Assembly (NCBI RefSeq): GCF_902459465.1
Contig: NC_047064.1
Span: 3,534,001 to 3,598,000 of the forward strand
Reading direction: 5' to 3'
Source: Asterias rubens
Lineage: Eukaryota
Length of the DNA stretch: 64,000 nt
The position numbers were made by a program, and so were the translations under genes. The notes beneath the pieces were generated by a model that saw only the letters and a list, made by a program, of their open reading frames with translations, was not told the DNA's origin and did not search any database. Each line of letters begins with the position of its first letter. The first letter of the stretch is position 1. This document shows positions 26,143-64,000 of the stretch, in pieces.

Positions 26143-26570
26143 AGTCAGGTTGGCTCAGTGGTTTCTTTCCATGCTTTTCAGCTCTGTGGACCCCGTGGTG
26201 GATTTCTCAAAGAGTTAGGACTAGTCTTATCTCGACTTAAGACGAGTAACTCATTCTAACTTAGGACTAGCCATACGTTTTTAATATCACTTAGGACTAG
26301 TCCTAACTCCTTGTGAAATCGACCCCCGGTTCGATACCCGGAACGGAGCCTTGCATGTGGATGGAAATACACCATACAGCAAGAACAGAGTGCAAATGCA
26401 GTCAGGTTGGGTTAGTGGTTTTTGTCCCTGCCGTTCACCTCTGTGGGCCCCGGTTCGATACCCGAAACCGGAACCTTGCATGATGATTGGGGTCTTCAGT
26501 CCCTACCTACTGCTTTGGTTTTCTCAAAAGGTTTTCCTTCCACGTCTAAAACATAAAATTCTTCATGGTC
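26143..26570 (+). mobile_element. Two tandem heads of a second tRNA-derived SINE family
   Basis: GCAGTCAGGTTGG(C/G)T(C/T)AGTGG ... GGTTCGATACCCG occurs twice. A minus-strand sister lies at 57538-57665. Confidence 0.65.
26197..26324. mobile_element. MITE inserted in a SINE head
   Basis: TIR GGTGGATTTCTCAAAGAGTTAGGACTAG / CTAGTCCTAACTCCTTGTGAAATCGACC. Confidence 0.75.
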
Positions 26571-26894
26571 TTTTCTACAAAAGGTTGGTGAGATGTTTCC
26601 TAAAGAATGCTTTGGCGACTAAATGATTCAGATGCACTATTCAAATTCAGAATGCAAGGCTTGTTATTTCATCTTAAACCGGCAGTTTGAAACTCGTCAA
26701 AGTTTAAAGAGTTTATACTAGTCGAGTATTTTAAGGTTTACCGGGGCATGACAATTTCCTGCGTGTAAAATGCGGTATGCTATAAGTATGAACGTCTGCC
26801 CTGGAACAAAATTGATATTTCCCCCCGTCATGAACATTTAACACAGTTATAGGTGATTGGAGATGGAGGGAGGGTAGAAGCTAATTGTACTTAC

Positions 26895-27064
26895 CTAAGG
26901 TGATCTGATAGCGACCTCTTCCCCCACCGCATCTCTCCCATCCCTTCACCGTTGCAATTGATCGGGGCCGGGGGGCACCCACCACCGTCACAGTTCGTTG
27001 CAAGACACACCATCAGTAGTGTGACGAGAAGCCAGTACGCAAAACACTTCTCCGCCGGTAGCAT
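26895..27064 (-). CDS. First coding exon of a putative neuropeptide precursor (signal peptide + Cys-bridged MRW-amide peptide + KR site)
   Basis: Manual translation: MLPAEKCFAYWLLVTLLMVCLATNCDGGGCPPAPINCNGEGMGEMRWGKRSLSDHL plus 2 nt (170 nt). It has a hydrophobic core after an N-terminal Lys, the G-KR amidation/cleavage motif at 26923-26915 and a consensus donor TAG|GTAAGT at 26894. A pyrimidine-rich acceptor (tttgtttcgtttttcgcttcAG) lies 1 nt before the ATG. Read unspliced it is only 57 codons, hence absent from the ORF track. Confidence 0.85.
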
Positions 27065-27582
27065 TCTGAAGCGAAAAACGAAACAAACCCCGAATAAGGA
27101 ACTGGCGTTGAACGAGCAACCGAGTCCAAGTCGAAGTATGTTACAATTTCAGTCCGTCTGGACGTTTATAGTCTCTGGTAGAGCTTATGTGGTGTTTAGG
27201 AAAACGCTCCCCGTGTGTCAATCCGCTCTGCCTTTACCCAACATAGAAGTCAGAACGGAGAAAGATTCCTAAAGTCCCGGGGATTTAGTTCTCAGAGCAG
27301 CACGATAGGTTTCCCAGCATGTATAAACCAGACAGCTGATGGAGAACTACAAGACAGAAGAAGAAACAAACTGATGATAGTCAGGATGTCTTTATTGTCT
27401 CGCGCTATATACTTGTCTCGCGAAGTCGCATGCTCTACCTGTGTCGTGAAACAATCTGTTCAGTACACTGTCGACCAGTCTGTCCGCAGCTTACGGGGCG
27501 AGTTATCCGTACTGCGGATGGGGAAGTGACACCCACGTGTCCGCAGACAAATTGCTTTTGTGTTGGCGCGCTTTTAACTTAC

Positions 27583-27725
27583 CGTGCTTTCCCAAAGACA
27601 CACCCATTATGACGTGCGCATGTGTGCACGTTGTTCTTTGTTGTTGTTGAGGGGTTGTGTACAGTTTTGTTTTAACGGACATGCGCTGTTGTAGCGAATT
27701 GTCCAATATCTAGGACGTTTTTATG
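27583..27725 (-). promoter_or_regulatory. Candidate 5' non-coding exon/core promoter of the neuropeptide gene
   Basis: Consensus donor CACG|GTAAGT at 27582 could join the acceptor at 27066. There is a CATAAAA element at 27719-27725 and a CRE half-site TGACGT at 27610-27615. An alternative TATATA lies at 27406-27411. Out-of-frame upstream ATGs weaken the model. Confidence 0.3.
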
Positions 27726-29129: not shown

Positions 29130-30343
29130 AAGTCTCCCATTGGAATACACAATGTGAGAAACGTTTATGACAGTTATGTTTCCCAGATTCAACTAAACAA
29201 ATAACTGATCAGATAAGTATTGATATTTTTCCCATAACCACATTACTGCGATGTAAAATGTATCTAAAAATTGTTTCATGTTATTAAAGGATACACTTTA
29301 CTTCTACCCAAAAGTTGTTATTGTTAAAATGTTGTGTATCTTATGTCTTATTTGTTTTCAGCTTAAACTGTTCTGCCATCGTGTCGCTTTTATTACGAAC
29401 TCGATGTGTCATGTAATATGTTCATCTGTCCTTTTGTCTGTCTGTCTGATTGTCTTGTTTTCTTGTCTGTCTGGCTGTTTTTTTTTTACAAGCTCATGCT
29501 TACCAAAATGGCCCGTACTCTATTTACTTATTTATGTTTACTCTTCTTTAAAGATAATGTTTTGCTTTAACTGTCGTGTTTCTCTTATGAGAGTAAGGAA
29601 ATAAACTATTCTTGAATCGAATTGAATTGAATCTAAGAGTGATTGCCAAACGTATCTTCTCTTTAAAGCAACAATGGATTATATTTTCTAAATTTGCCAA
29701 GGGCAAATCCATAGCGATGTTATTTATTTATTTAATAATTAACTTAGTTATTGCCATTAGTTATTCATTAAATGATTTATTCATTACTCAAATTGATGTT
29801 TAATTTATGTATGATTCATACCCAGGGCGTGATTTTCTAGGTAAACTGTAGATAACGTGACATTTTTTTTTAACTAACACGGATTTTCGCAATAACGACG
29901 GCTTGAAATGTTCGTTTTAGATTTCAATTTTAAAATAACCCACATTCAATCCAATTGAGCTCAAATAAATTCAAAGCAATACTATTTTAGCACCAACAAA
30001 CCCACGAATTATATACCGTGTAAATAGCCTACCTGTATTAATTGTTACCCCTACACCGACGTGTGTTAGCACTGTATACTAAAAACAAAAAAAAATTCTT
30101 TGTTCTTACGCCAAAATAAAAAATCAGCCAGAGGAAATATGTATCTGTGATATTTTGTAAGTCATCCTGAATCGAGCTCAATTCAAGTCATTTTCAGCCG
30201 AGTGCAATGCCCCTAAAATGCACCTCGAGGCACAAGAGCCTGGACCACTGCCCCCATTCCCACCTGGGCATTTTCGTCGATGTCGAAACCTCCTCATCTT
30301 TTATAGATTGCAGTTTTGTCTTTACCCTAAACCTTCCCCTTAC

Positions 30344-30524
30344 TCAGTCTGTCCCCTTTGAATCCGTCTTGGCCAAATCCCACGTGGTCCTCTTCTCCTT
30401 GCGTTTAAAACACATTTCTCCTTCTCGCAGATAGGCACTCAAAGGAATCGAGAAACCAATAGTTGTTTTCGAAGCGTTCACTCTCATAACCAACACCCGA
30501 GGCGAAAGGGAGAAAAAACCTGAC
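30344..30524 (-). other. Candidate exon (5' UTR exon or diverged paralogous terminal exon)
   Basis: A long pyrimidine tract ends in aaacAG at 30525, and a donor TGA|GTAAGG lies at 30343. The phase-2 frame is open to a TGA exactly at the donor. Confidence 0.3.
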
Positions 30525-30963
30525 CTGTTTTGCAATCGGTGAGAAATAAAGAAGAAAAACCCAAAAACAAATACACAAAAATTGCGGTGAACCGGGGGAT
30601 TCAAATCACAAAGAGTAATATGATGTCGTGATGCAACAACTTTCTAGAATAAAGTGCCCGCCAGTAGAGAGAGAGAGAGATACAGGGGAACAAAAAGAGA
30701 AAGGCAAACCTTTTTATCTATAATCACAACTCTCAATTTGGGACCGATGTAGACGCAGGAAACGCTTGAATTTAACTCTCGTTTCTCCACACTGAAGTGT
30801 TCAAATGGATAAATAATTAAATAGTTCAGTGCGTGTTGCCTCCCTGTGTTTGAGACAGATAATACGCCGTGTTAACACCAATCAAAGCTCCATGGTCGTT
30901 TTTATTACAGGCTAGCATGAAATAGTTAAGACGCATGTGAAGAAGACAAAAATTGCCTTCAGC

Positions 30964-35842: not shown

Positions 35843-36906
35843 TTAATAATTGTACTTGAAGCTTTGAAGTTTTGCATGTACAGTTATATACTGTAAACAT
35901 TGAGAGTGCACTTCAACCAATTACCAATCATTTTACCCTAATATCACTAAAACCTGTTCATTTTTGCCGTAAGCAATCCTGACAAGAACTTGACTCATTG
36001 GGGATACGCACACCGGCAGCCAAATGTGCCTTTAACTTGTTAATCATTCACATCAACAATCTCTACCCTCACAGGTGCCCTTTTACTCCTGGGTGAAGAG
36101 GAGCAATTATAGTTAAGTGACTTGCCCAAGGACACAACTGTCACGACCGGGATTCGAACCCACACTCCGGTGCCCCAGACACCAGGGTTTGGTTAAATAA
36201 TGTGCTAGAATGAACAATGTTTTGACAAAACTCCGTGTAAGGCCCACACACCGTATAGGGATGAGCGTAATAAATGGTGCTGATTGTGATGAACACCATA
36301 ATTAAGACAAGAAAATGTGCTGTTGCAAACTGCTTTACTAGCTTGAAGGACATATAACTGCAAACATTGGTTGATGGCCCGACGTTTCGACCATCGTAGA
36401 GTCTTCATGACGTTGCACTCAAAGTTCATTCAACTTTTATCCTGGCTATTTTTGGTGATTAGCTAATTTTCAATCCATACTTAGCGAGTTAAAATTAGCT
36501 TATCGCCTTAATTAATTCATTACCACAAAACTCGCTATTCATATTCCATTCAAGCGTTATTCATATTTCTTTCAAGCGTCAAACTCGCCACACTTAATTA
36601 ACTTTTTTTTTTGTCAGAAGCAAGCTATCAATACAATCGATCTGCATAAAGTGAGGGGGTGGTCAAGCAATGCTACCCCCGTAAAAACTACCTTCCCAAG
36701 CACACCGTATACCATGTAAGGCAATCGAGTACATGACATGTAGGATTGGAAACTTTGCATGGTGAAATTACGTAAGGTTTGCCGTAATACCATGTAATAA
36801 CAATCTCTAAAAAATTAGTTAGGGTGATTCTTCAAAGAACCGTTGGTTGGATTTGAAACCTACGGTTCTTTTCAGAACCACCCAACCCATTTATTATAGA
36901 TGTAAA

Positions 36907-37156
36907 GTGTCGTGGCCAAAAGGTTAATAGCACCGAATTCAACTATGGTGTTTCTGATCAGCAGAGAGTGGGTTTGAGCCCCAGTCGTGACACTTGTTTC
37001 CTTAAGCAAGACAAATAACCATTGCTTCGTCCTTCGGATGGGACGTAAAACCGTCGGTCCCGTGTGTTGTGTAACGCACGTTTGAAAGAACCCAGTGCAC
37101 TTATGGAAACAAGAAGGGGTTCGCCCCGGTGTTCCTAGCTGGATCGGCAGCATATT
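36907..37156 (+). mobile_element. tRNA-derived SINE, most complete copy
   Basis: A-box-like GTGGCCAAAAGG and B-box-like GGGTTTGAGCCCC. Central TTCGGATGGGACGTAAAACCGTCGGTCCCG domain (resembles the V-SINE-type core, from memory). Confidence 0.75.
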
Positions 37157-40826: not shown

Positions 40827-41169
40827 AGGCACTGGACACCTTTGGTAATTGTCAAAGACCAGTATTCTCACTTGGTGTATCCATACATATGTATACAGTA
40901 TAAACAGACCTTTGAAAACTTGGGCTCAATCGGTCTCCTTAGTGGCAAGAGAATAACGAAGACAAAAACCCGAACTTTTTGTGTCCTTTTAGATGCATAC
41001 AGGCCTGAAGTCTTTTAATATTTGAGTGAGAAATTACCTCTTTCTTAAAAACTACGTTACTTCAGATGGAGTGATTTCTGATAATGTGATTAACAGCTCT
41101 TCATTGCTCGTTACCAAGAAAGTATTAATGATAACAATTCATTTGAATAATTACCAATAGTCAGTGCCT
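40827..41169. mobile_element. Kolobok-like MITE family 1, full-length
   Basis: TTAA-AGGCACTGGACAC ... CAGTGCCT-TTAA. Confidence 0.8.
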
Positions 41170-42133
41170 TTAAATGTTCCGTAAATATAAATCCACCATT
41201 TCATTAACTACTATAAAGAAGGTTTCACTTAAATCCAGTTCTTTCTAAAGAAGCGAGTGAACTTCCAATCATTAGATCAAACTCAAGAACAAACATCAAA
41301 CTTTTCTCAGAAGGCACACACACAGAAAAGGGGTTATTAAGTAATAAGTTGGTTGAATGTGGGACATTCCTAATAAAATACAAAAGTTGCCAGCCGCTCA
41401 CCTGTTATTCCGACGTCAATGTTCTAAGCTATTGCTACAGCTGTGTTTAGAATAAAACAGTACACGTACATCGCAAATCTAAAATAGAAGAAATTGCACA
41501 AGAAGCTTCTTACTGTCACGATAAACTCAATAAAAAACGTGACTTGTGAAATGGTAACAGATCCGGAGACATAAAGACAATAGAAGATAACACAATAAGA
41601 CATTATTGGGTTTCACATTACAACTGATATAGCGCCGAGGTTGGAGCGCACCTGTACGGGACCAGTGTTGACGCAAACACCCTGGAAAAACACCCCAACC
41701 TCTCTAAAACAATTCGTGCTATCCGAGCTTCTACTCTTCCCTATATCTGGGATGTTTTTCCCCGGCTATAAATTGGCCTTCACTGCAATATATAGGTCTT
41801 TTTTACATTTCAAATTTCAGCAGGAAATTAGACTCTATTGTGGTGATACCTTACGCTTGACTGGTCAGCGCCAAGTGTAAAAGTCGATACGCTGGAATGA
41901 GCTTTATAATTAGGTGCGCGACATTTCGGGAACGAGCACAAACAATACGACCATTTATCACGAGTCACGTGTTGATTCAGACTGAGCTAAACAATTTTCA
42001 GCGAACTGTTCTTATAATTTCGGCAACATGAGAACTATAATAGTTTAAAGTTTTAGTCTCCGTTATAAGATTGGGCGGAGTATACGTTATATCAAGGATC
42101 ATGATGTCCAACGTTACTATTACCATGTAGGTA

Positions 42134-42478: not shown

Positions 42479-42614
42479 TATTAACCGTAATATAAAGTGA
42501 TATTCATTTACAAGGGAGGGACCAGCTTCAGTTTTATAAAAATGATTTTTTTTTAGGAAGAAACTTTAAGTAAAATGTAAATTTGCGGGAACAACCATGT
42601 GTAGATCTCTGTTG

Positions 42615-42686
42615 TGTGTATGTGTTGGCTCTGAGAAGAGCCGGTGTGGCATCGACGTTTCGAACAGTATTCTCTGCTCGTCTTAA
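42615..42686 (-). mobile_element. Penelope-type terminal relic with hammerhead-like core
   Basis: Minus strand: (C)TTAAGA-C-GAGCAG-agaata-CTGTTC-GAAAC-GTC. Related degraded pieces lie near 13145-13220 and 36365-36410. Confidence 0.5.
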
Positions 42687-44276: not shown

Positions 44277-46409
44277 AGTACTACAATTTGGATATTCAAA
44301 TTTCCACCCACAAATAGTTGAATCTGGATCGGGGTCAAAACAGTCGACTGTGGCAAACCTGCAGAGAACTATTTCAATCTGAAATATTTTCAAAATTTGA
44401 GAACAAAATCGAAAGTCCCCACAAGTCACCGTTGTTTGCTATCACTGCCCCCGTATCCTCCGATTTGATGTTTTTTCGTGGGCTGATTGTATTTGGTTTT
44501 ATAGTAAAAAAGGGGAAATATAGAATCCGAGTTGCCTGTTGGTTTGTTTCACCCAGAACTCGGGGAAAGTGTACAATGCTTAATGCGTTGGGGTGGTAAC
44601 AGCCAAATTATATTCTTTATCACCGATGTTAAACTAACATTTATAAAAGAGAATTAGAGCTAATTTCTTCTTCCCAAACCCAATTATGTTCTTTCAAATT
44701 TTAAGCCTTGGTTTAATTTGGTAAAAGTGAATTTCAATCATTGACTTCCCTTTTTCCACATTCCACATCTCACAAGAGACCTTGGGTTTTTAGGGCAGTC
44801 AAGGGCTGGTAAAATCTTAAGTTGTACCAATTTAAAAGCCAAAACAAACAGCATGCTCTTCTAAATACCGTTTTATAAATTATCATGAAAGAAAAGCTGC
44901 TTTAACTTCTGCCAATTTTGAATTTTTTTTCTTGTAAATATAAATCATTCACTCTATTTAATTATGTGATCAAAACACATCTGAACCATTTAAACGTTCG
45001 TTTGAGAACGCAAAAGCAATTTCCAAAGAGTTATATGTTTTACTATGAAACAGCAGCGTTTTTTATTATCGAAAAATGGAAAATTATACCTTATCTGAAA
45101 TCGATGCCTTCAGTGAGACAGTCAAAGTTGAGAAAATAGCATTCGATTATTTGTTTCCCTCTGTACGTGTTTAGGTAAAAGTCGTTCCACAAAAATACGT
45201 GACAGCATACGGCTAAAATCAATCTGTTTTTCAAACCAAAGGTCGAGTCGTCTCCGTAACGAGTGGGTGCATAGGTGCGCGTGCACGCTTGTAATGACAA
45301 ACACGACCATGACAGATCATTGACAAACAAACATAAATTCAAGTTGACAATTTCTAGATCGAAATGACATGAACAATGCTTTCATTCGTCCAAATGACAC
45401 GTTTTACATTGAGACATAAATCTGTTTCCCTAGAAGGTTTAGTCATATATTGTGTATTTTATGCGGGTTTTGTTTATTCGAAGGGTTTGACGTTTTTAAG
45501 CTAGAGAGAGTACAATATTTCATGAAATGTAAAGTTTTGTTTTATGAACTTAGCTGAGTAAGACTGTGGCCCGTTGCTGTAGATATCCAAGGGAACGTAA
45601 TCGCTTGTCTAGACGTAGTTCATGCTTCAATTTTTAACCAGGACCCGATTTCATAGAGTTGCTTAAGCACACAAACTAGCTGAGCACAACAACCAAGTCA
45701 AGTACTATGTTCCTCTATAATTTAGATTCTATAATCGAGTCAACATGGGTCTGAGCTATTGATGGCATCATTGTTTTAGGGAATTTTTTTCTTTTTTTCA
45801 ATGTCAACAACCACACAAACCCTCCAACAAAACTGTGAACATTAAATCAAACTCATCAGTTTTAGTCCCGGGAGGAACGCATTTAAAAAGAAAAATGATT
45901 GTGTACCCTCAACCTTAATAGCTTCCTGGACTTTGACAATACTTGACAAATATCTGACTGGGGAATTATACACTATGGAGCGATCTTTTGAATCAGTTTG
46001 CCTCCGGGTTGAACTTAATGATTGTTTCCATAACTAGCAATATTCTACTAATTGTCATTAACTCCAACAAGACAAATTGATACATGGGTCCATTCTCTAA
46101 CAACTCACTCAATAAGAGAAAAGCGAAGAAAAAAAACCACAAAGGGAAACACAAACCTCTGTTTTTCTTTCTCCCCGCAATACCTCCCCGGACAATAACA
46201 CCTTTAATTACAGTCCTTAACCCATGACGACAGGTTGTAATGAGCAATTAATAAGCCGCGAGCTCCAATTCACACCCTATTATTGTAAGGTCTGCGCAGT
46301 TGCTAACGACTGACTGAAGACAAAAGATGCGGTAATAATGTGATTATTGTTATTTTTTACCCTTGTTGGTAATTACAGTGATCAATGCTGACTGGACAAT
46401 GAGTGTTAC

Positions 46410-48450: not shown

Positions 48451-48750
48451 ATATTAATTTTGGTTTTTACCCATACACCGATGTGTGTTAGCACTGTATA
48501 CTCAGTACTTTCCCGAGTCCTGTGAACAAATATCACAGGCATGTTACTCGGGTGGGATTCGAACCCACGACCCTTGAAATTCCAGAGCAGTGTCTTACCA
48601 ACTAGACTACCGAGGTTGCCCGGCAGCTAGAGGCAGTTTTTTTTTACAGGACTCGGGAAAGTACTGAGTATACAGTGCTAACACACATCGGTGTATGGGT
48701 AAAAACCAAAATTAATATTCTTTATCCCCGATGCAAATGAAACATCTATT
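48451..48750. mobile_element. TIR element carrying a tRNA-like Pol III module
   Basis: Perfect 73-bp inverted repeats (48451-48523 / 48646-48718) enclose a tRNA-like sequence at 48547-48614 (minus). Fragments of the family lie at 11405-11545, 19120-19237 and 30045-30085. Confidence 0.8.
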
Positions 48751-49245: not shown

Positions 49246-49454
49246 AAAAACAATTTAAACAAAGAACGAAATGGAAAGCAAAAGGTTCACGGTAACATCC
49301 AATGTAACCTATCACATTGCAAAAAGGAACTATGTAATACAAGCTGAAATGAATGTTGTTTCTAGTCTGCAGAGGGCAATGTTTGTGAAGTAGAGTTTGT
49401 GAAAATCTGAATATTTATCTTTGGAAATGAAATTAATAATATTGTGTAAGTTAA

Positions 49455-49810
49455 AGACTCTGGAAACTATTGGTAATTGTTAAAGACCAGTCTTCTCATT
49501 TGCTGTATCTCAACATATGCATAAAATAACAAACCTGTGAAAATTTGAGCTCGATTGGTTGTCGAAGTTGCGAGAGAGTAATGAAAGAACACCCTTGTCA
49601 CAACAAGTTGTGTGCATTCTGTTGCTTGATTTCGAGACCTCAAAATTCTAAACTTGAGGTCTCGAAATCAAATTCAGGGAAAATTACTTCGTTCTCTACG
49701 TCACTTCAGAGGGAGCCGTTTCTCACAATGTTTTATACTATCAATCTCTCCCCATTACTCGTTACCAAGTGGGGTTTTATGCTTATAATTATTTTGAGTG
49801 TCCACTGCCT
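49455..49810. mobile_element. Kolobok-like MITE family 1
   Basis: TTAA-AGACTCTGGAAACTATTGG ... GTGTCCACTGCCT-TTAA. Confidence 0.75.
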
Positions 49811-50473
49811 TTAAGTGTATGATAACTAAGCCCTACATTCAAAGCGTTGTCATATAGCATATTATAAAAAATTACAGCGCAATCATTCATTGTCTGTTTG
49901 TAATTATTTTTCCCACAGTCGTGAAAATCAACAAATGACAAGAACTGACTTGGTGTTAGCAACTGTTGTCCGCAATTATATCGTGTCCCACCCCGTCCCA
50001 TTATCGTATCTGTGTTAATTTGTCACACGTAGATACCAAGAAATTCAATTTAACACCGGAGATTTTGCAGTGAACTAATTTATTTCAAAGCAGCGAGTCC
50101 CATGAGATTCTACGAAACTGTTCAACGTTTGTCTTGTAAATAGAATGCAAGTCAATCAAGGAGACTAGAAAATGGACATTTTGCAATATGAGATCACGTT
50201 CTTCATTTTGAATTGGACTGGAACGGTAGAAGCTCAACTCTTTTCATTTCATTTCATATACATTTATTTCATGCCAACATCAATCAATACATTGTAATAA
50301 CATTGTTCAGAAAACATATAATAACTTGTACTAAGGAAAACTAATCCAGTTAATGAATATAAGGACGTGCAGAGAATAGTGGTCCAAACATTAATGGGTC
50401 TTAAGAGTGAACGATTTTTGAGGATTCGGTAGACAGTCATTTGGGGTTAGGACGGAAAACAATATTGTTTTAA

Positions 50474-50849
50474 AGGCAGTGGACACTATTGGTAATTGTC
50501 AAAGACCAGTCTTCTTACTTTGTGTATCTCAACATATGCATAAAATAACCCCAACCTGTGAAAATTTGAGCTCAATTGGTCGTCGAAGTTGCGAGGTAAC
50601 AATGTAAGAAAAACACCCCTACACGAAGTTGTGTTCTTTCAGATGCTTGATTTCGAGACCTCAAAATCTAATTCTGAGGTCTCGAAATCAAATTCGTGGA
50701 AAATTACTTCTTTCTCGAGAACTACGTCACTTCAGAGGGAGCGGTTTCTCACAATGTTTTATACCATTAATCTCTCCCCATTACTCGTTACCAAGTAAGG
50801 TTTTATGCTAATAATTATTTTGAGTAATTACCAATAATGTCCACTGCCT
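50474..50849. mobile_element. Kolobok-like MITE family 1, full-length
   Basis: TTAA-AGGCAGTGGACACTATTGG ... CCAATAATGTCCACTGCCT-TTAA. Confidence 0.85.
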
Positions 50850-58451: not shown

Positions 58452-58662
58452 CAAGACCTCAGAATTAGATTTTGAGGTCTCGAAATCAAGCATCTGAAAG
58501 TATACAACTTCGTGTGACAAGGGTGTTTTTTCTTTCATAGTTATCTTCGAAGAACAATTGAGCTCTAATTTTCACAGGTTTGTTATTTTACGCATATGTT
58601 GAGATACACCATGTGAGAAGACTGGTCTTTGACAATTACCAATAGTGTCCAGTGTCGTTAAG
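58452..58662. mobile_element. Kolobok-like family 1, half copy
   Basis: GAGGTCTCGAAATCAAGC ... TTACCAATAGTGTCCAGTGTC. Confidence 0.7.
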
Positions 58663-60169
58663 CTCGAATGATTGTGATGGCCGATGTACAAGGGGTTGCA
58701 GTTTGCCAAATTAATCGGGTTTATAATTGCCAAGGTTCTAACCTTGATATTGGTGAAAAAACATCAGCAAAATTGTTGCATCAAGGATTCAGTGTAGTTC
58801 GAGATCTCTGGATTACTATAATCACACACCAATAATTATATCCAGTAACTCTAGTAACAACTGAAACACTTACCTGTTACGGTGGAAACTGGAGTTAAGC
58901 TGCATGCCGATTATTATTATAACGTGGCCTTCACACGCCTGCCTCTTTTGTGCACCACACTTGATTTATAAAATTGTAATTTTAGGGAGAAGGAACAAAG
59001 TAGTATTTCGACTGCTGAAGCTACAACCCCTCTCGAGTTTTACATCTGTGGACAGACCGCTGGCAATTAAAAGACAATACTTTCGAAATTCCCGGTGTGC
59101 GAGTTTCAAGCAGTAGTCATCAAAGCGTAATGACAAACCTATATGTGTATCTCATCGCCTAGTGCTGGTCACCGAGTATAAAATAATACTGTATACCGAT
59201 TATATATATCTTTACCCGTCTGTGTATCGAAGTTTCTTATAGTTCGCTTCCCACGCGCACTACTGGCAGCTGATAGCGGGCCAACAAAAACATCGAGTTT
59301 AATTGAGCGGACCACCGCGTGCATTGGCGTGGAGTTCATGTAACAATCTTTTGATATTATAATTAGTTTTTGACATGGTTAATTAGGAAGTGCTATCTGG
59401 TCAATCACCGAACACTGTCAAAATGATCCTTCTTCTCTTTTAATTTGGGAGAACTGGTAATTAAGAAAAGAAAAACTAGTATTGTTTCTTTATTTTGTTT
59501 GTCAATTAATATTGAAAACAAAGAAGTAGGATGCAGGGGGGTTTTGCCATACAAATGATGGTAGTTCCGTTACGGTGTGCACACGCTTCAGGTTTAAATT
59601 ATTACCATGTAACTTCCTGAATTTATTTCTCAGTTACAATTATGTTCATGCACAAGTGTTGTGTGTGCTATCACATAGACCTATTGTATGTATTTTGCAT
59701 TTTACAGCCCAAACTCCCATTCAAGATGTTAATTCAAGACGAAAAAAAATAAAAAGACATAAGACACATCTGTTTTGATGAGTCAACACAAGTGTTGACT
59801 CTGAGAAAAACTACGTAAATTTATTGCTTGACGTTTGAATCAGTATTCAGTATACTCGGATTGTACTGTCATGAAACTTTATTCGGCCAGTATTTTAATA
59901 AAAATACACCAATTCACGAAACAAATATTTGCTTTAACAATCTTCAGATAACCAGAACAATTGTAAACCAAAATACATAACCGATGTTACCAACGCAAAC
60001 ATAACTATTGGGAAGCCCCAGATGAAAATCTCTTGATTGATGAAAAGTGTGGAAGTCTGAAATTAAAATTCACGGTGTAGACTGACGAATAGTATTAGTG
60101 ATTGCTAATGATGACGTTGACGTAAAGAGTTACGTAACCCTCCTGAAAACTCCCGGATCAGCCGGATCC

Positions 60170-60399: not shown

Positions 60400-60783
60400 A
60401 GGCAGTGGACACTATTGGTAATTACTCAAAATAATTATTAGCATAAAACCTTTCTTCGGGTGACGAGTAATGGGGAGAGGTTGATGGTAAAAAAAACACT
60501 GTGAGAAACGGCTCCCTCTGAAGTGCCATAGTTTTCGAGAAAGAAGTAATTTTCCACGAATTTGATTTCGAGACCTCAGATTTAGAACTTGAGGTCTCGA
60601 AATCAAGCATCTGAAAGCACACAAGTTCGTGTGACAAGGGTGTTTTTTTCTTTCATTATTATCTCGCAACTTTGATGACCGATTGAGCTCAAATTTGCAC
60701 CGGTTTGCTATTTTATGCATTATGTTGAGATACACCAACTGTGGAGGCTAGTCTTTGACAATTACCAATAGTGTCCACTGCCT
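60400..60783. mobile_element. Kolobok-like MITE family 1, full-length reference copy
   Basis: TTAA on both sides (60396-99, 60784-87). TIR AGGCAGTGGACACTATTGGTAATT. Internal hairpin GATTTCGAGACCTCA...TGAGGTCTCGAAATC. No coding capacity. A TTAA TSD with AG...CT termini fits Kolobok rather than piggyBac (CC...GG). Confidence 0.85.
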
Positions 60784-60982
60784 TTAAGTATGATTTTGGG
60801 GGGTTGACTAAGTGTTGTGCGTTAATAGCTCTATATGAAGTTAATACTAATATCAAAGTCTTATATAGCGCACGTTATCTACCAAACAAGGTACTCAAGG
60901 CGCTCAGGATATACAAACTCTCAGAAAGATAGGTTATTGCAGTGATGAATTCTGAGAGTCCCAATTATATAGCAGCTTTTAA

Positions 60983-63116: not shown

Positions 63117-63800
63117 ACACAGTGAAATGTGTATTGCTCCTAACAGGTGCCATGCTCGTTAATTTCACTAGCAATCGAGCAGTTTCAGATTGAAACTACA
63201 TTACATTCTTTCTTGGAAAGAACTGTGGCAGTTAACTTCATTTGTATGAAGTATTTTTTTGTTTTGACGGAACCACTGTTTAATTTAGAGCTTCCTCCCT
63301 TTTCAATATCCGATAGTTAGCAAAGATAGTTCATCATGTGAACTTGCCTAATTTACAACTGGTACAGTTGTCTGTACATCCTATTCTTGGAACCTATTTA
63401 ACAATAGTATCTTCAACTTTTAAACATTAATGATTTCAAAATCTGTGGAATCTATAGTTTTTTATTAAGTTTCTTTTAGGGGGGGTGGCTATGTCATTAT
63501 ATCAACCACTGTGATAGGCAATATGACGGTTGGGATCATTGCCGTAACAAAAAAAATCATTCCTGGACTTGCAATTGGTGGTACTGATTTTGACCATCTT
63601 TAAAGGTTTGACATTCAGTACTATGAAGTGTTTCTATCGTAACTTTTAAAGTTAAATCGATTGATTTATATCAATCGATCTTGAGTGAAATTGAAATAAT
63701 TGAACGGGTACACGTTTCTCGACCGAACACAAATTAGTAAGAAACACGACACCCCACCCTTACAAACCCCATCCTAAAAAACTTCAAGATTTCAACTTAA

Positions 63801-64000
63801 AGACCTGCACACTATTGGTAATTGTCAAAGACTAGTCTTCACAGTTGATGTATCTCAACATATGCATAAAATACACACCTGTGAAAATTTGAGCTCAATT
63901 GATCGTCGAAGTTGCGAGATATTAATGAAAGAAAAAACACCCTTGTCACACCATGTTCACACGAAGTTGTGTGCTTTTAGATGCTTGATTTCGTGACCTT
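63801..64000. mobile_element. Kolobok-like family 1, cut by window end
   Basis: TTAA-AGACCTGCACACTATTGGTAATTGTCAAAGAC. Confidence 0.75.

What the first reader, a model, noticed from the sequence alone, without database searches (positions are those of the whole stretch)
26895..27064. Hidden neuropeptide precursor: a disulfide-ringed MRW-amide peptide missed by the ORF track
Seen: the minus-strand exon translates to MLPAEKCFAYWLLVTLLMVCLATNCDG|GGCPPAPINCNGEGMGEMRW-G-KR-SLSDHL and ends at an AG|GTAAGT donor, with a strong acceptor 1 nt before the ATG. Established: signal peptide, then peptide, then Gly-Lys-Arg is the hallmark of prohormone-convertase/PAM-processed amidated neuropeptides. Inferred: the mature peptide is about GGCPPAPINCNGEGMGEMRW-NH2 with a C-x6-C ring. 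The exact signal cleavage (after N24 vs G27) is uncertain and changes the cysteine count. The C-terminal MRW-amide matches the end of starfish luqin (EEKTRFPKFMRW-NH2), but the luqin FPKF motif is absent and the peptide itself is cyclised, which I do not recognise from calcitonin, CCAP/NG, vasopressin-type, MCH or somatostatin families. It could be an orphan signalling system or a divergent luqin-receptor ligand. It may also be one of the already catalogued but uncharacterised starfish precursors (e.g. the Arnp series).
Basis: partly seen in the sequence, partly recalled or inferred. Interest (0 to 1): 0.88.

Follow-up and report, generated by a model that had tools for sequence, protein, structure and literature searches.

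The report
Hidden luqin-like starfish neuropeptide gene
The small exon belongs to a real three-exon gene spread over about 65 kb of a sea-star genome; it is a so far unrecognised, very divergent copy of the luqin neuropeptide gene, lies about 1 Mb from luqin, and should give a ring-closed peptide ending in the same MRW-amide as luqin.

Summary
Minus strand 27064-26895 reads exactly as reported, with a cag|A acceptor and an AG|GTAAGT donor. It is coding exon 2 of a 3-exon gene that RefSeq annotates in Asterias amurensis as "uncharacterized protein" (XP_071788475/6, 106/105 aa). Exon 1 (MQLNSSFHRN) lies at 58905-58874. Exon 3 lies beyond the window.

The window is about 94% identical to A. amurensis, so it is a congener, probably A. 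rubens. No protein is annotated for this gene in that species. Exon 2 is 170/170 nt identical between the two species.

The gene matches none of the catalogued Arnp precursors or CCHamide-like precursors. Four lines of evidence make it a paralogue of the luqin precursor gene:
- It has the same 3-coding-exon layout, with a phase-2 intron splitting an Arg codon 11-12 residues after the start.
- Its signal-peptide core resembles that of luqin (FxxWLLxTxL; block shuffles give about 0.002-0.009).
- MRWGKR sits at the same position in a precursor of the same size (hhalign E 6e-5).
- It lies 1.14 Mb from luqin on the same chromosome, in the same orientation.

It differs from luqin in three ways. It has no KFMRW core. 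It has a C-x6-C ring inside the peptide. The C-terminal C-x10-C domain is missing, and the 3' exon and intron-2 phase are different. Expression, processing and receptor are untested.

The parts
58964..58970 (-). TATAAAT box 65 nt upstream of the annotated start codon. It lies in a block that is identical in A. amurensis.
   Evidence: perfect run 58856-58996
58874..58905 (-). Coding part of exon 1: ATG..MQLNSSFHRN plus AG. The donor AG|GTAAGT leaves a phase-2 intron that splits Arg11.
   Evidence: 100% match to residues 1-11 of P0001/P0005
27066..58873 (-). Intron 1, 31.8 kb, phase 2.
27066..27420 (-). About 360 nt directly upstream of exon 2, 98% identical to A. amurensis. It includes a conserved TATAAAC at 27170-27164 and the polypyrimidine tract and acceptor. 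It may be an internal promoter or enhancer. If it is used as a promoter, Met12 (27064) would be the start.
   Evidence: no ATG between the TATA and 27064. Function is inferred.
26895..27065 (-). Exon 2 (171 nt): the third base of Arg11, then Met12 to Leu67, then AG.
26999..27046 (-). Signal-peptide hydrophobic core CFAYWLLVTLLMVCLA, which resembles the core of the luqin precursor signal peptide.
26924..26983 (-). Predicted mature peptide GGCPPAPINCNGEGMGEMRW, with C-x6-C. The N-terminal limit is uncertain; cleavage could fall after A33, C36, or G38-G40 of the 105-aa form.
   Evidence: the cleavage site is inferred by the -3/-1 rule and by alignment to the mass-spectrometry-proven ArLQ N-terminus
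26915..26923 (-). Gly-Lys-Arg: amidation donor plus dibasic convertase site.
26889..26894 (-). GTAAGT donor of intron 2 (phase 2).
1..26888 (-). First 26.9 kb of intron 2. Exon 3 lies outside the window. In A. amurensis it is 33.3 kb downstream of exon 2, has an aaag|CAG| tandem acceptor, encodes 38-39 residues and contains no Cys.

Best explanation
The exon is coding exon 2 of a three-exon, roughly 65-kb gene that arose by local duplication of the luqin neuropeptide precursor gene and then diverged strongly.

Shown:
- The gene model exists in the sister species.
- The exon is as conserved between the two species as luqin's own exon.
- The exon-1/exon-2 architecture, the signal-peptide core and the MRW-Gly-Lys-Arg position match the luqin gene.
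- The two genes sit 1.14 Mb apart, in the same orientation, on one chromosome.

Inferred:
- The 105/106-residue prepropeptide enters the secretory pathway.
- The signal peptide is cut somewhere between residues 33 and 40.
- A prohormone convertase cuts after Lys60-Arg61, and carboxypeptidase removes KR.
- PAM (peptidylglycine alpha-amidating monooxygenase) turns Gly59 into a C-terminal amide. The product is an 18-22-residue peptide ending ...GEMRW-NH2.
- The two cysteines (C-x6-C) close an 8-residue ring.

The 3' part of the ancestral gene, with the C-x10-C domain, was replaced. The intron-2 donor lies 10 nt further 3' than in luqin, the phase is 2 instead of 1, and a different, Cys-free exon 3 follows.

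The likeliest targets are the two luqin-type receptors, because the peptide keeps luqin's amidated MRW end. This last step is the least certain.
For: Gene reality:
- The HMMER scan of 1.84 billion representatives gives one strong hit, P0001, at E 3e-33 and 100% identity. It corresponds to XP_071788476.1 and XP_071788475.1, two isoforms that differ by one Ser.
- An aaag|CAG| tandem acceptor explains that difference.
- The gene spans 65,348 bp with 3 coding exons. Exon 1 and exon 2 are both present and intact in the window.

Constraint:
- Exon 2 is 170/170 nt identical. It sits in a 254-nt perfect run, the second longest in the window, against a median identity of 94.3%.
- The proven luqin exon 2 shows 1 mismatch in 152 nt between the same two species, with flanks at 94%.

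Luqin paralogy:
- BLASTP against ArLQP gives 23.5 bits, E 3e-4.
- hhalign gives probability 65%, E 5.9e-5, and aligns exactly the exon-2-encoded parts of both proteins.
- tblastn with A. rubens and P. miniata luqin precursors has this exon as its best hit in both the window and the A. amurensis locus.
- With MRWGKR removed, the N-terminal similarity (FAYWLLVTLLM against FSAWLLLTILV / FGVWLLLTLLV) is reached by only 47/5000 and 11/5000 block shuffles.
- Luqin genes of A. rubens and P. miniata have a 35-nt coding exon 1 ending AG|gt, phase 2, splitting Arg12. This gene has a 32-nt coding exon 1 ending AG|gt, phase 2, splitting Arg11.
- The precursors are 106 and 105/106 residues long, with MRWGKR at residues 54-59 and 56-61.
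- Both genes are on CP134956.1, luqin at 23.19-23.21 Mb and this gene at 24.35-24.42 Mb, both forward.
- All four degenerate codons of MRWGKR differ between the two genes. The motif is therefore kept at the protein level after an old split.
Against: - There is no direct expression or peptide evidence. No protein is annotated for this gene in the A. rubens proteome held by the database.
- It is not among the 40 precursors found in the A. rubens radial nerve cord transcriptome.
- No transcript-derived contig is on record.
- Conservation carries no dN/dS signal, because there are zero substitutions. About nine other non-coding blocks in the window are equally conserved.
- The sequence similarity to luqin is weak (33% over about 50 residues) and includes a hydrophobic signal peptide.
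- The KFMRW core shared by echinoderm luqins is absent, and the C-x10-C domain is absent.
- Intron 2 differs in phase.
- No orthologue was detected outside Asterias.
Confidence: 0.72

Rival explanations
1. It is an unrelated, lineage-specific orphan secreted-peptide precursor. The MRW-amide end, the precursor size and the position near luqin are coincidence or convergence.
For: The peptide body shares nothing with luqin except MRW. Signal peptides are compositionally alike. RF/RW-amide endings have arisen repeatedly. The pairwise E-values are modest.
Against: Four independent coincidences would be needed: 1.14-Mb linkage in the same orientation (about 0.5% for a random gene in a genome of about 0.45 Gb), the same phase-2 Arg-splitting first intron, signal-core similarity beyond composition, and MRWGKR at the same residue number.
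Confidence: 0.1
2. It is a decaying or non-translated duplicate. The locus is transcribed, hence the gene model, but the ORF is a relic of a partial luqin duplication and no bioactive peptide is made.
For: The 3' domain is lost and replaced. It has not been seen in nerve-cord catalogues or in the A. rubens annotation. Exon conservation could belong to a larger conserved non-coding block running 26878-27601.
Against: The split is old, since all degenerate codons of MRWGKR differ. Even so, the ORF is open across three exons, the signal core, Gly-Lys-Arg and both Cys are intact, and the two species have identical exons 1 and 2. A neutral relic would not keep exactly the processing motif.
Confidence: 0.12
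3. It is a member of the echinoderm CCHamide-like (Arnp25-type) or another cyclic amidated family. The architecture of signal peptide, one cyclic amidated peptide and a dibasic site is the same.
For: Zandawala et al. 2017 describe exactly this architecture, and CCHamide-like precursor 2 was known only from brittle stars. Insect CCHamides have a C-x6-C ring (own knowledge).
Against: The ophiuroid peptides are TNHCKGRLPKFCFLHP-NH2 and RGICSDPLACGAAF-NH2. They have different ring sizes, 2-4 residues after the ring instead of 10, and no sequence likeness. Arnp25 is 97 residues with C-x4-C. Linkage and gene structure point to luqin instead.
Confidence: 0.03

Closest known systems
Luqin-type precursor of starfish (ArLQP, ALJ99961.1 / XP_033624181.1; peptide ArLQ EEKTRFPKFMRW-NH2)
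   Same: Both are 106 or 105/106 residues long. Both have an unusually long N-terminal signal region, a single peptide directly after it, and MRW-Gly-Lys-Arg at residues 54-59 and 56-61. Both have three coding exons with a phase-2 first intron in an Arg codon. They lie on the same chromosome 1.14 Mb apart in the same orientation.
   Different: The peptide body is unrelated: there is no FPKF/KFMRW, and the net charge is about 0 instead of +3. The peptide contains a C-x6-C pair. There is no C-terminal C-x10-C domain. Intron 2 is in phase 2 rather than 1, and the last exon is different. The introns are 32-33 kb instead of 6-11 kb.
Second luqin-type precursor of the crinoid Antedon mediterranea (AmLQP1 beside AmLQP2; Aleotti et al. 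2022, PMC9793003)
   Same: It is the only reported case of two luqin-type genes in an echinoderm. One copy is divergent in its C-terminal part.
   Different: Both crinoid copies keep the PP..SRW-amide luqin core and a C-terminal Cys pair. The present gene keeps neither the core nor the Cys pair.
Aplysia luqin transcript made by exon skipping (review PMC7041311)
   Same: [quoted passage not shown] This shows that the Cys domain is dispensable for making the peptide.
   Different: There it is an alternative transcript of the one luqin gene. Here it is a separate gene with its own 3' exon.
Echinoderm CCHamide-like precursors (Arnp25; Ophionotus CCHamide-like 1 and 2)
   Same: They also have a signal peptide, one cyclic amidated peptide and Gly-Lys-Arg.
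   Different: There is no sequence likeness. The ring size and tail length differ, and there is no evidence of shared gene structure or linkage.

Membership tests
Luqin/RYamide-type neuropeptide precursors | A single peptide placed directly after the signal peptide and followed by Gly plus a dibasic site | tested here: met
   The signal peptide was judged by its hydrophobic core and by alignment to ArLQP. SignalP was not available.
Luqin/RYamide-type neuropeptide precursors | Ambulacrarian C-terminal RW-amide, which is MRW-amide in eleutherozoans (PMC9793003) | tested here: met
   ...GEMRW-G-KR. Amidation itself is inferred.
Luqin/RYamide-type neuropeptide precursors | Conserved peptide core: KFMRW-NH2 with an upstream Pro in echinoderms (PMC4772807) | tested here: not met
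   The core here is GMGEMRW. The prolines lie inside the ring, 12-15 residues from the end.
Luqin/RYamide-type neuropeptide precursors | A C-terminal pair of Cys separated by 10 residues | tested here: not met
   There is no Cys after GKR in either A. amurensis isoform. tblastn finds no luqin exon-3 likeness in the 85-kb locus. Exon 3 of the window's own genome lies outside the window.
Luqin/RYamide-type neuropeptide precursors | Gene structure of asteroid luqin genes: short coding exon 1, a phase-2 intron in Arg12, and a phase-1 intron after GKRYSP | tested here: inconclusive
   Intron 1 matches in phase, codon type and position within one codon. Intron 2 lies 10 nt further 3' and is in phase 2.
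Luqin/RYamide-type neuropeptide precursors | Sequence homology to family members beyond chance | tested here: inconclusive
   BLASTP E 3e-4 and hhalign probability 65%, E 5.9e-5. Shuffle tests on the part without MRWGKR give 0.002-0.009. This is suggestive on its own and convincing only together with the linkage.
Luqin/RYamide-type neuropeptide precursors | The peptide activates luqin-type receptors (ArLQR1, ArLQR2) | not testable with these tools
   This needs a cell-based receptor assay with synthetic peptide.
Echinoderm CCHamide-like (Arnp25-type) precursors | Sequence likeness of the cyclic peptide to Arnp25 or the Ophionotus CCHamide-like 1/2 peptides | tested here: not met
Catalogued uncharacterised A. 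rubens precursors (Arnp11-25) | Matching length, signal-peptide length, cleavage-site positions and Cys pattern | tested here: not met
   None of the nine published descriptions fits a 105/106-residue protein with KR at 60/61 and C-x6-C. 'MRW' occurs in that paper only for ArLQ.
Neuropeptide precursor (generic) | Expression in neurons or endocrine cells, and detection of the processed peptide | not testable with these tools
   No transcript or peptide data are reachable.

The most novel reading that the evidence does not exclude
The copy has left the luqin system. A partial local duplication kept only the promoter-proximal exons of luqin, captured a new 3' exon, and evolved a ring-closed, uncharged MRW-amide peptide. 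That peptide now signals through a different receptor (for example one of the orphan peptide GPCRs expanded in starfish), or discriminates or antagonises between the two luqin receptors ArLQR1 and ArLQR2. This would be a datable, traceable birth of a new peptide signalling channel.
Probability: 0.3. Interest if true: 0.75.

Novelty: new variant of a known kind. Interest (0 to 1): 0.6.

Why it matters
Asterias rubens is the reference species for echinoderm neuropeptide biology. The literature states that eleutherozoan echinoderms have a single luqin-type precursor (PMC9793003), yet A. rubens has two luqin receptors, both activated by ArLQ (PMC5940834).

A second, cryptic luqin-derived gene would add a candidate ligand to that system. 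It keeps only the amidated MRW end and has gained a disulfide ring.

It would also give a clean example of how a neuropeptide gene diverges after local duplication: signal peptide and processing site kept, peptide body and 3' exon replaced.

Finally, it shows why such genes escape similarity-based and nerve-cord-transcriptome catalogues. The test is cheap: one synthetic peptide, two cloned receptors, one in situ probe and one targeted mass-spectrometry search.

Tried and rejected
- I searched inside the window for a downstream last exon in the right phase with a C-x8-12-C pair. Only junk ORFs turned up. The explanation came later: exon 3 lies outside the window and has no Cys.
- A word-indexed protein search with the 56-residue exon product gave nothing, because of the length filter. 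The same search with the full 105-aa protein found only itself, so no annotated orthologue exists in A. rubens, Patiria, Acanthaster, urchins and so on.
- The weak HMMER hits P0002-P0004 are unnamed metagenomic or repetitive proteins. P0004's 'PPSPCNGEGWGEEK' repeat resembles the ring region, but I take this as a low-complexity chance match.
- Literature string searches for MRWGKR, GEMRW and EMRWGKR gave zero occurrences. 'MRWamide' and 'RWamide' papers refer only to canonical luqins or to cnidarian peptides.
- The Arnp series and the CCHamide-like precursors were checked and rejected.
- Exact-product look-ups for transcript-derived contigs (the 105-aa form and the Met12-start form) found nothing on record.
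- I tested whether exon 1 or exon 2 derives from a repeat, prompted by a 'QLSSNFHR' repeat translation that resembles exon 1. Both exons are single-copy in the window, and the ~160-bp repeat does not include them.
- Three look-ups of the scan's earlier notes returned nothing on this locus or on luqin.
- I made no structure prediction, because it is uninformative for a 20-residue peptide.
- SignalP and a convertase-site predictor were not available.

Full report
**The observation**

The exon is preceded by a pyrimidine-rich tract ending cag|A, one base before the ATG. It ends ...CAC CTT AG|GTAAGT. The sub-parts were verified by translation:
- hydrophobic core at 27046-26999
- the 20-residue GGC...MRW stretch at 26983-26924
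- GKR at 26923-26915

I also tested whether such a pattern is rare. A loose filter (Met, uncharged hydrophobic 12-mer, then G[KR][KR], at least 45 open codons) finds only this ORF in the window. It also finds 0.21 per window in 100 Markov-1 random windows. The pattern alone is therefore not beyond chance, and the case rests on the evidence below.

**The gene**

A full HMMER scan of 1.84 billion representative proteins with the 56 residues returned one strong hit: P0001, E 3e-33, 100% identity over residues 12-67 of 105.

P0001 and its cluster mate P0005 are XP_071788476.1 and XP_071788475.1, 'uncharacterized protein' isoforms X2 and X1 of Asterias amurensis. The gene spans 65,348 bp on CP134956.1 and has three coding exons:
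- Exon 1 carries ATG plus MQLNSSFHRN plus AG.
- Exon 3 encodes 38-39 residues, has no Cys and two RR sites, and begins at an aaag|CAG| tandem acceptor. That acceptor explains the one-Ser difference between the isoforms.

A model with 32-33 kb introns, tiny exons and a NAGNAG isoform pair is unlikely to be ab initio, so I infer transcript support. I could not see the reads.

In the window, exon 1 is at 58905-58874, with a TATAAAT box at 58970-58964. Exon 3 is beyond coordinate 1.

**The organism**

The window is collinear with the A. amurensis locus over 59.5 of 64 kb, at a median of 94.3% identity. It is therefore a congener and not A. amurensis itself. The A. rubens and A. amurensis luqin loci differ by the same amount, with flanks at 94%. 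I take the window to be A. rubens (inference).

The A. rubens proteome is in the searched database, since it returned XP_033624181.1. It holds no product of this gene. In the window's genome the gene therefore appears to be unannotated as coding.

**Constraint**

Exon 2 is 170/170 nt identical between the two species. It lies in a 254-nt perfect run (26878-27131), the second longest in the window. Exon 1 with its TATA box lies in a 141-nt perfect run.

For comparison, exon 2 of the proven luqin gene has 1 mismatch in 152 nt between the same species.

Two caveats apply. With zero substitutions there is no dN/dS. About nine other blocks in the window are equally conserved. These include the ~360 nt directly upstream of exon 2 (98% identical), which carry a conserved TATAAAC at 27170-27164 and no ATG before 27064. 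This could be an internal promoter that makes Met12 the start. The mature peptide would be the same either way.

**Is it already catalogued?**

- None of the Arnp11-25 descriptions in Semmens et al. 2016 fits in length, cleavage positions or Cys spacing. 'MRW' occurs in that paper only for ArLQ.
- Arnp25 was later called CCHamide-like 1. A CCHamide-like 2 is known only from brittle stars. Their peptide sequences, read from the supplement, do not resemble this one.
- Full-text searches for MRWGKR, GEMRW and EMRWGKR found nothing.
- Papers on RW-amides and on luqin up to 2026 mention only the canonical luqin in eleutherozoans. [quoted passage not shown]

**Relation to luqin**

I read the ArLQP sequence from the 2016 supplement and used it to fetch the proteins of A. 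rubens (P0006), Patiria miniata (P0007) and A. amurensis (P0008), together with their loci.

Sequence:
- BLASTP of P0001 against P0006 gives 23.5 bits, E 3e-4.
- hhalign gives 65% probability, E 5.9e-5. It aligns luqin residues 16-65 with residues 12-67 here, which are exactly the exon-2 products of the two genes.
- tblastn with either luqin precursor has this exon as its top hit in both the window and the A. amurensis locus, at E about 0.15-0.2.
- To avoid circularity I removed MRWGKR and everything after it. The remaining similarity is FAYWLLVTLLM against FSAWLLLTILV or FGVWLLLTLLV. Shuffles that keep the composition of the hydrophobic block reach that score in only 47/5000 and 11/5000 cases.

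Gene structure:
- Both luqin genes have a 35-nt coding exon 1 that ends AG|gt. The intron is phase 2 and splits Arg12. Exon 2 is 152 nt, followed by a phase-1 intron.
- The present gene has a 32-nt coding exon 1 that ends AG|gt. The intron is phase 2 and splits Arg11. Exon 2 is 171 nt, followed by a phase-2 intron.

Size: 106 against 105/106 residues, with MRWGKR at 54-59 against 56-61.

Linkage: in A. amurensis both genes lie forward on CP134956.1. Luqin is at 23.19-23.21 Mb and this gene at 24.35-24.42 Mb. A random gene would fall that close about 0.5% of the time in a genome of about 0.45 Gb; the genome size is from my own knowledge.

Age: the four degenerate codons of MRWGKR all differ between the two genes. 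The split is therefore old and the motif has been kept at the protein level.

**What is not luqin-like**

- The KFMRW core and basic character of echinoderm luqins are absent.
- The peptide carries a C-x6-C pair.
- The C-x10-C domain that defines luqin precursors is missing.
- Intron 2 is shifted 10 nt and changes phase, and a different last exon follows.

The simplest history is a local duplication that kept exons 1-2 and acquired a new 3' exon. The Aplysia exon-skipped luqin transcript shows that the Cys domain is not needed to make the peptide.

**Mechanism (inferred)**

1. The signal peptide is removed between residues 33 and 40. Candidate sites by the -3/-1 rule are A33, C36 and G38-G40. 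By alignment to ArLQP, whose cleavage site is proven by mass spectrometry, the site falls near G38-G40.
2. A convertase cuts at KR 60/61, the basic residues are trimmed, and Gly59 is converted to an amide.
3. The two Cys form a disulfide. Only cleavage after A33 would leave a third Cys.
4. Expected masses are listed.
5. The receptor is unknown. The luqin receptors are the first candidates.

**Rivals**

- A convergent orphan precursor (about 0.1).
- A transcribed relic that is not translated or not functional (about 0.12).
- A CCHamide-like family member (about 0.03).

The main weakness of the preferred reading is the absence of any expression or peptide evidence. The gene is also absent from nerve-cord-based catalogues, which may mean low or non-neural expression.

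**Verdict**

The gene is a new, strongly modified variant of the luqin family. It is present in RefSeq only as an uncharacterized protein of the sister species, and I could not find it described in the searchable literature.

Noticed in passing
window 4401-4901, 7751-8051, 8451-8951, 24201-24551, 27151-27601, 30101-30551, 36751-37151, 41101-41951, 45301-45601: These blocks are at least 98.5% identical to A. amurensis, against a 94.3% median. The perfect runs reach 291 nt (36846-37136) and 217 nt (41219-41435 and 30324-30540). They look like conserved non-coding elements inside the two giant introns, perhaps enhancers of this gene. I found no ORF or Rfam match explaining them.
   Followed up: partly
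window 58500-58700 and about 20 further places (e.g. 63796-63957, 49451-49611, 50470-50632, 60621-60788, 9202-9360): A dispersed repeat of about 160 bp, SINE-like, with copies 70-94% alike on both strands. One copy lies about 200 nt from exon 1 but does not include it.
   Followed up: partly
window 48544-48616 (-): Rfam tRNA match (43.8 bits) that ARAGORN does not call. It may be a tRNA-derived repeat or a pseudogene.
   Followed up: no
window 42602-42647 (-): Histone 3' UTR stem-loop match just at Rfam's threshold (34.6 against 34 bits), with no histone ORF next to it. It is probably a chance match.
   Followed up: partly
window 26082-26240 and 26351-26626 (+): Two neighbouring ORF translations share a motif (SGWLSGFFPCFSALWTPWW and SGWVSGFCPCRSPLWAPV). 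This suggests two copies of another repeat, 250-800 nt downstream of the exon inside intron 2.
   Followed up: no
L002 (A. rubens), L003 (P. miniata), L004 (A. amurensis) luqin loci: Luqin gene structure is conserved between a forcipulatid and a valvatid starfish: 35-nt coding exon 1, phase-2 intron; 152-nt exon 2, phase-1 intron; introns of about 9.5-10.9 kb and 5.9-6.4 kb. The luqin review I searched (PMC7041311) does not mention introns or gene structure. RefSeq names these proteins 'uncharacterized' in all three species.
   Followed up: yes
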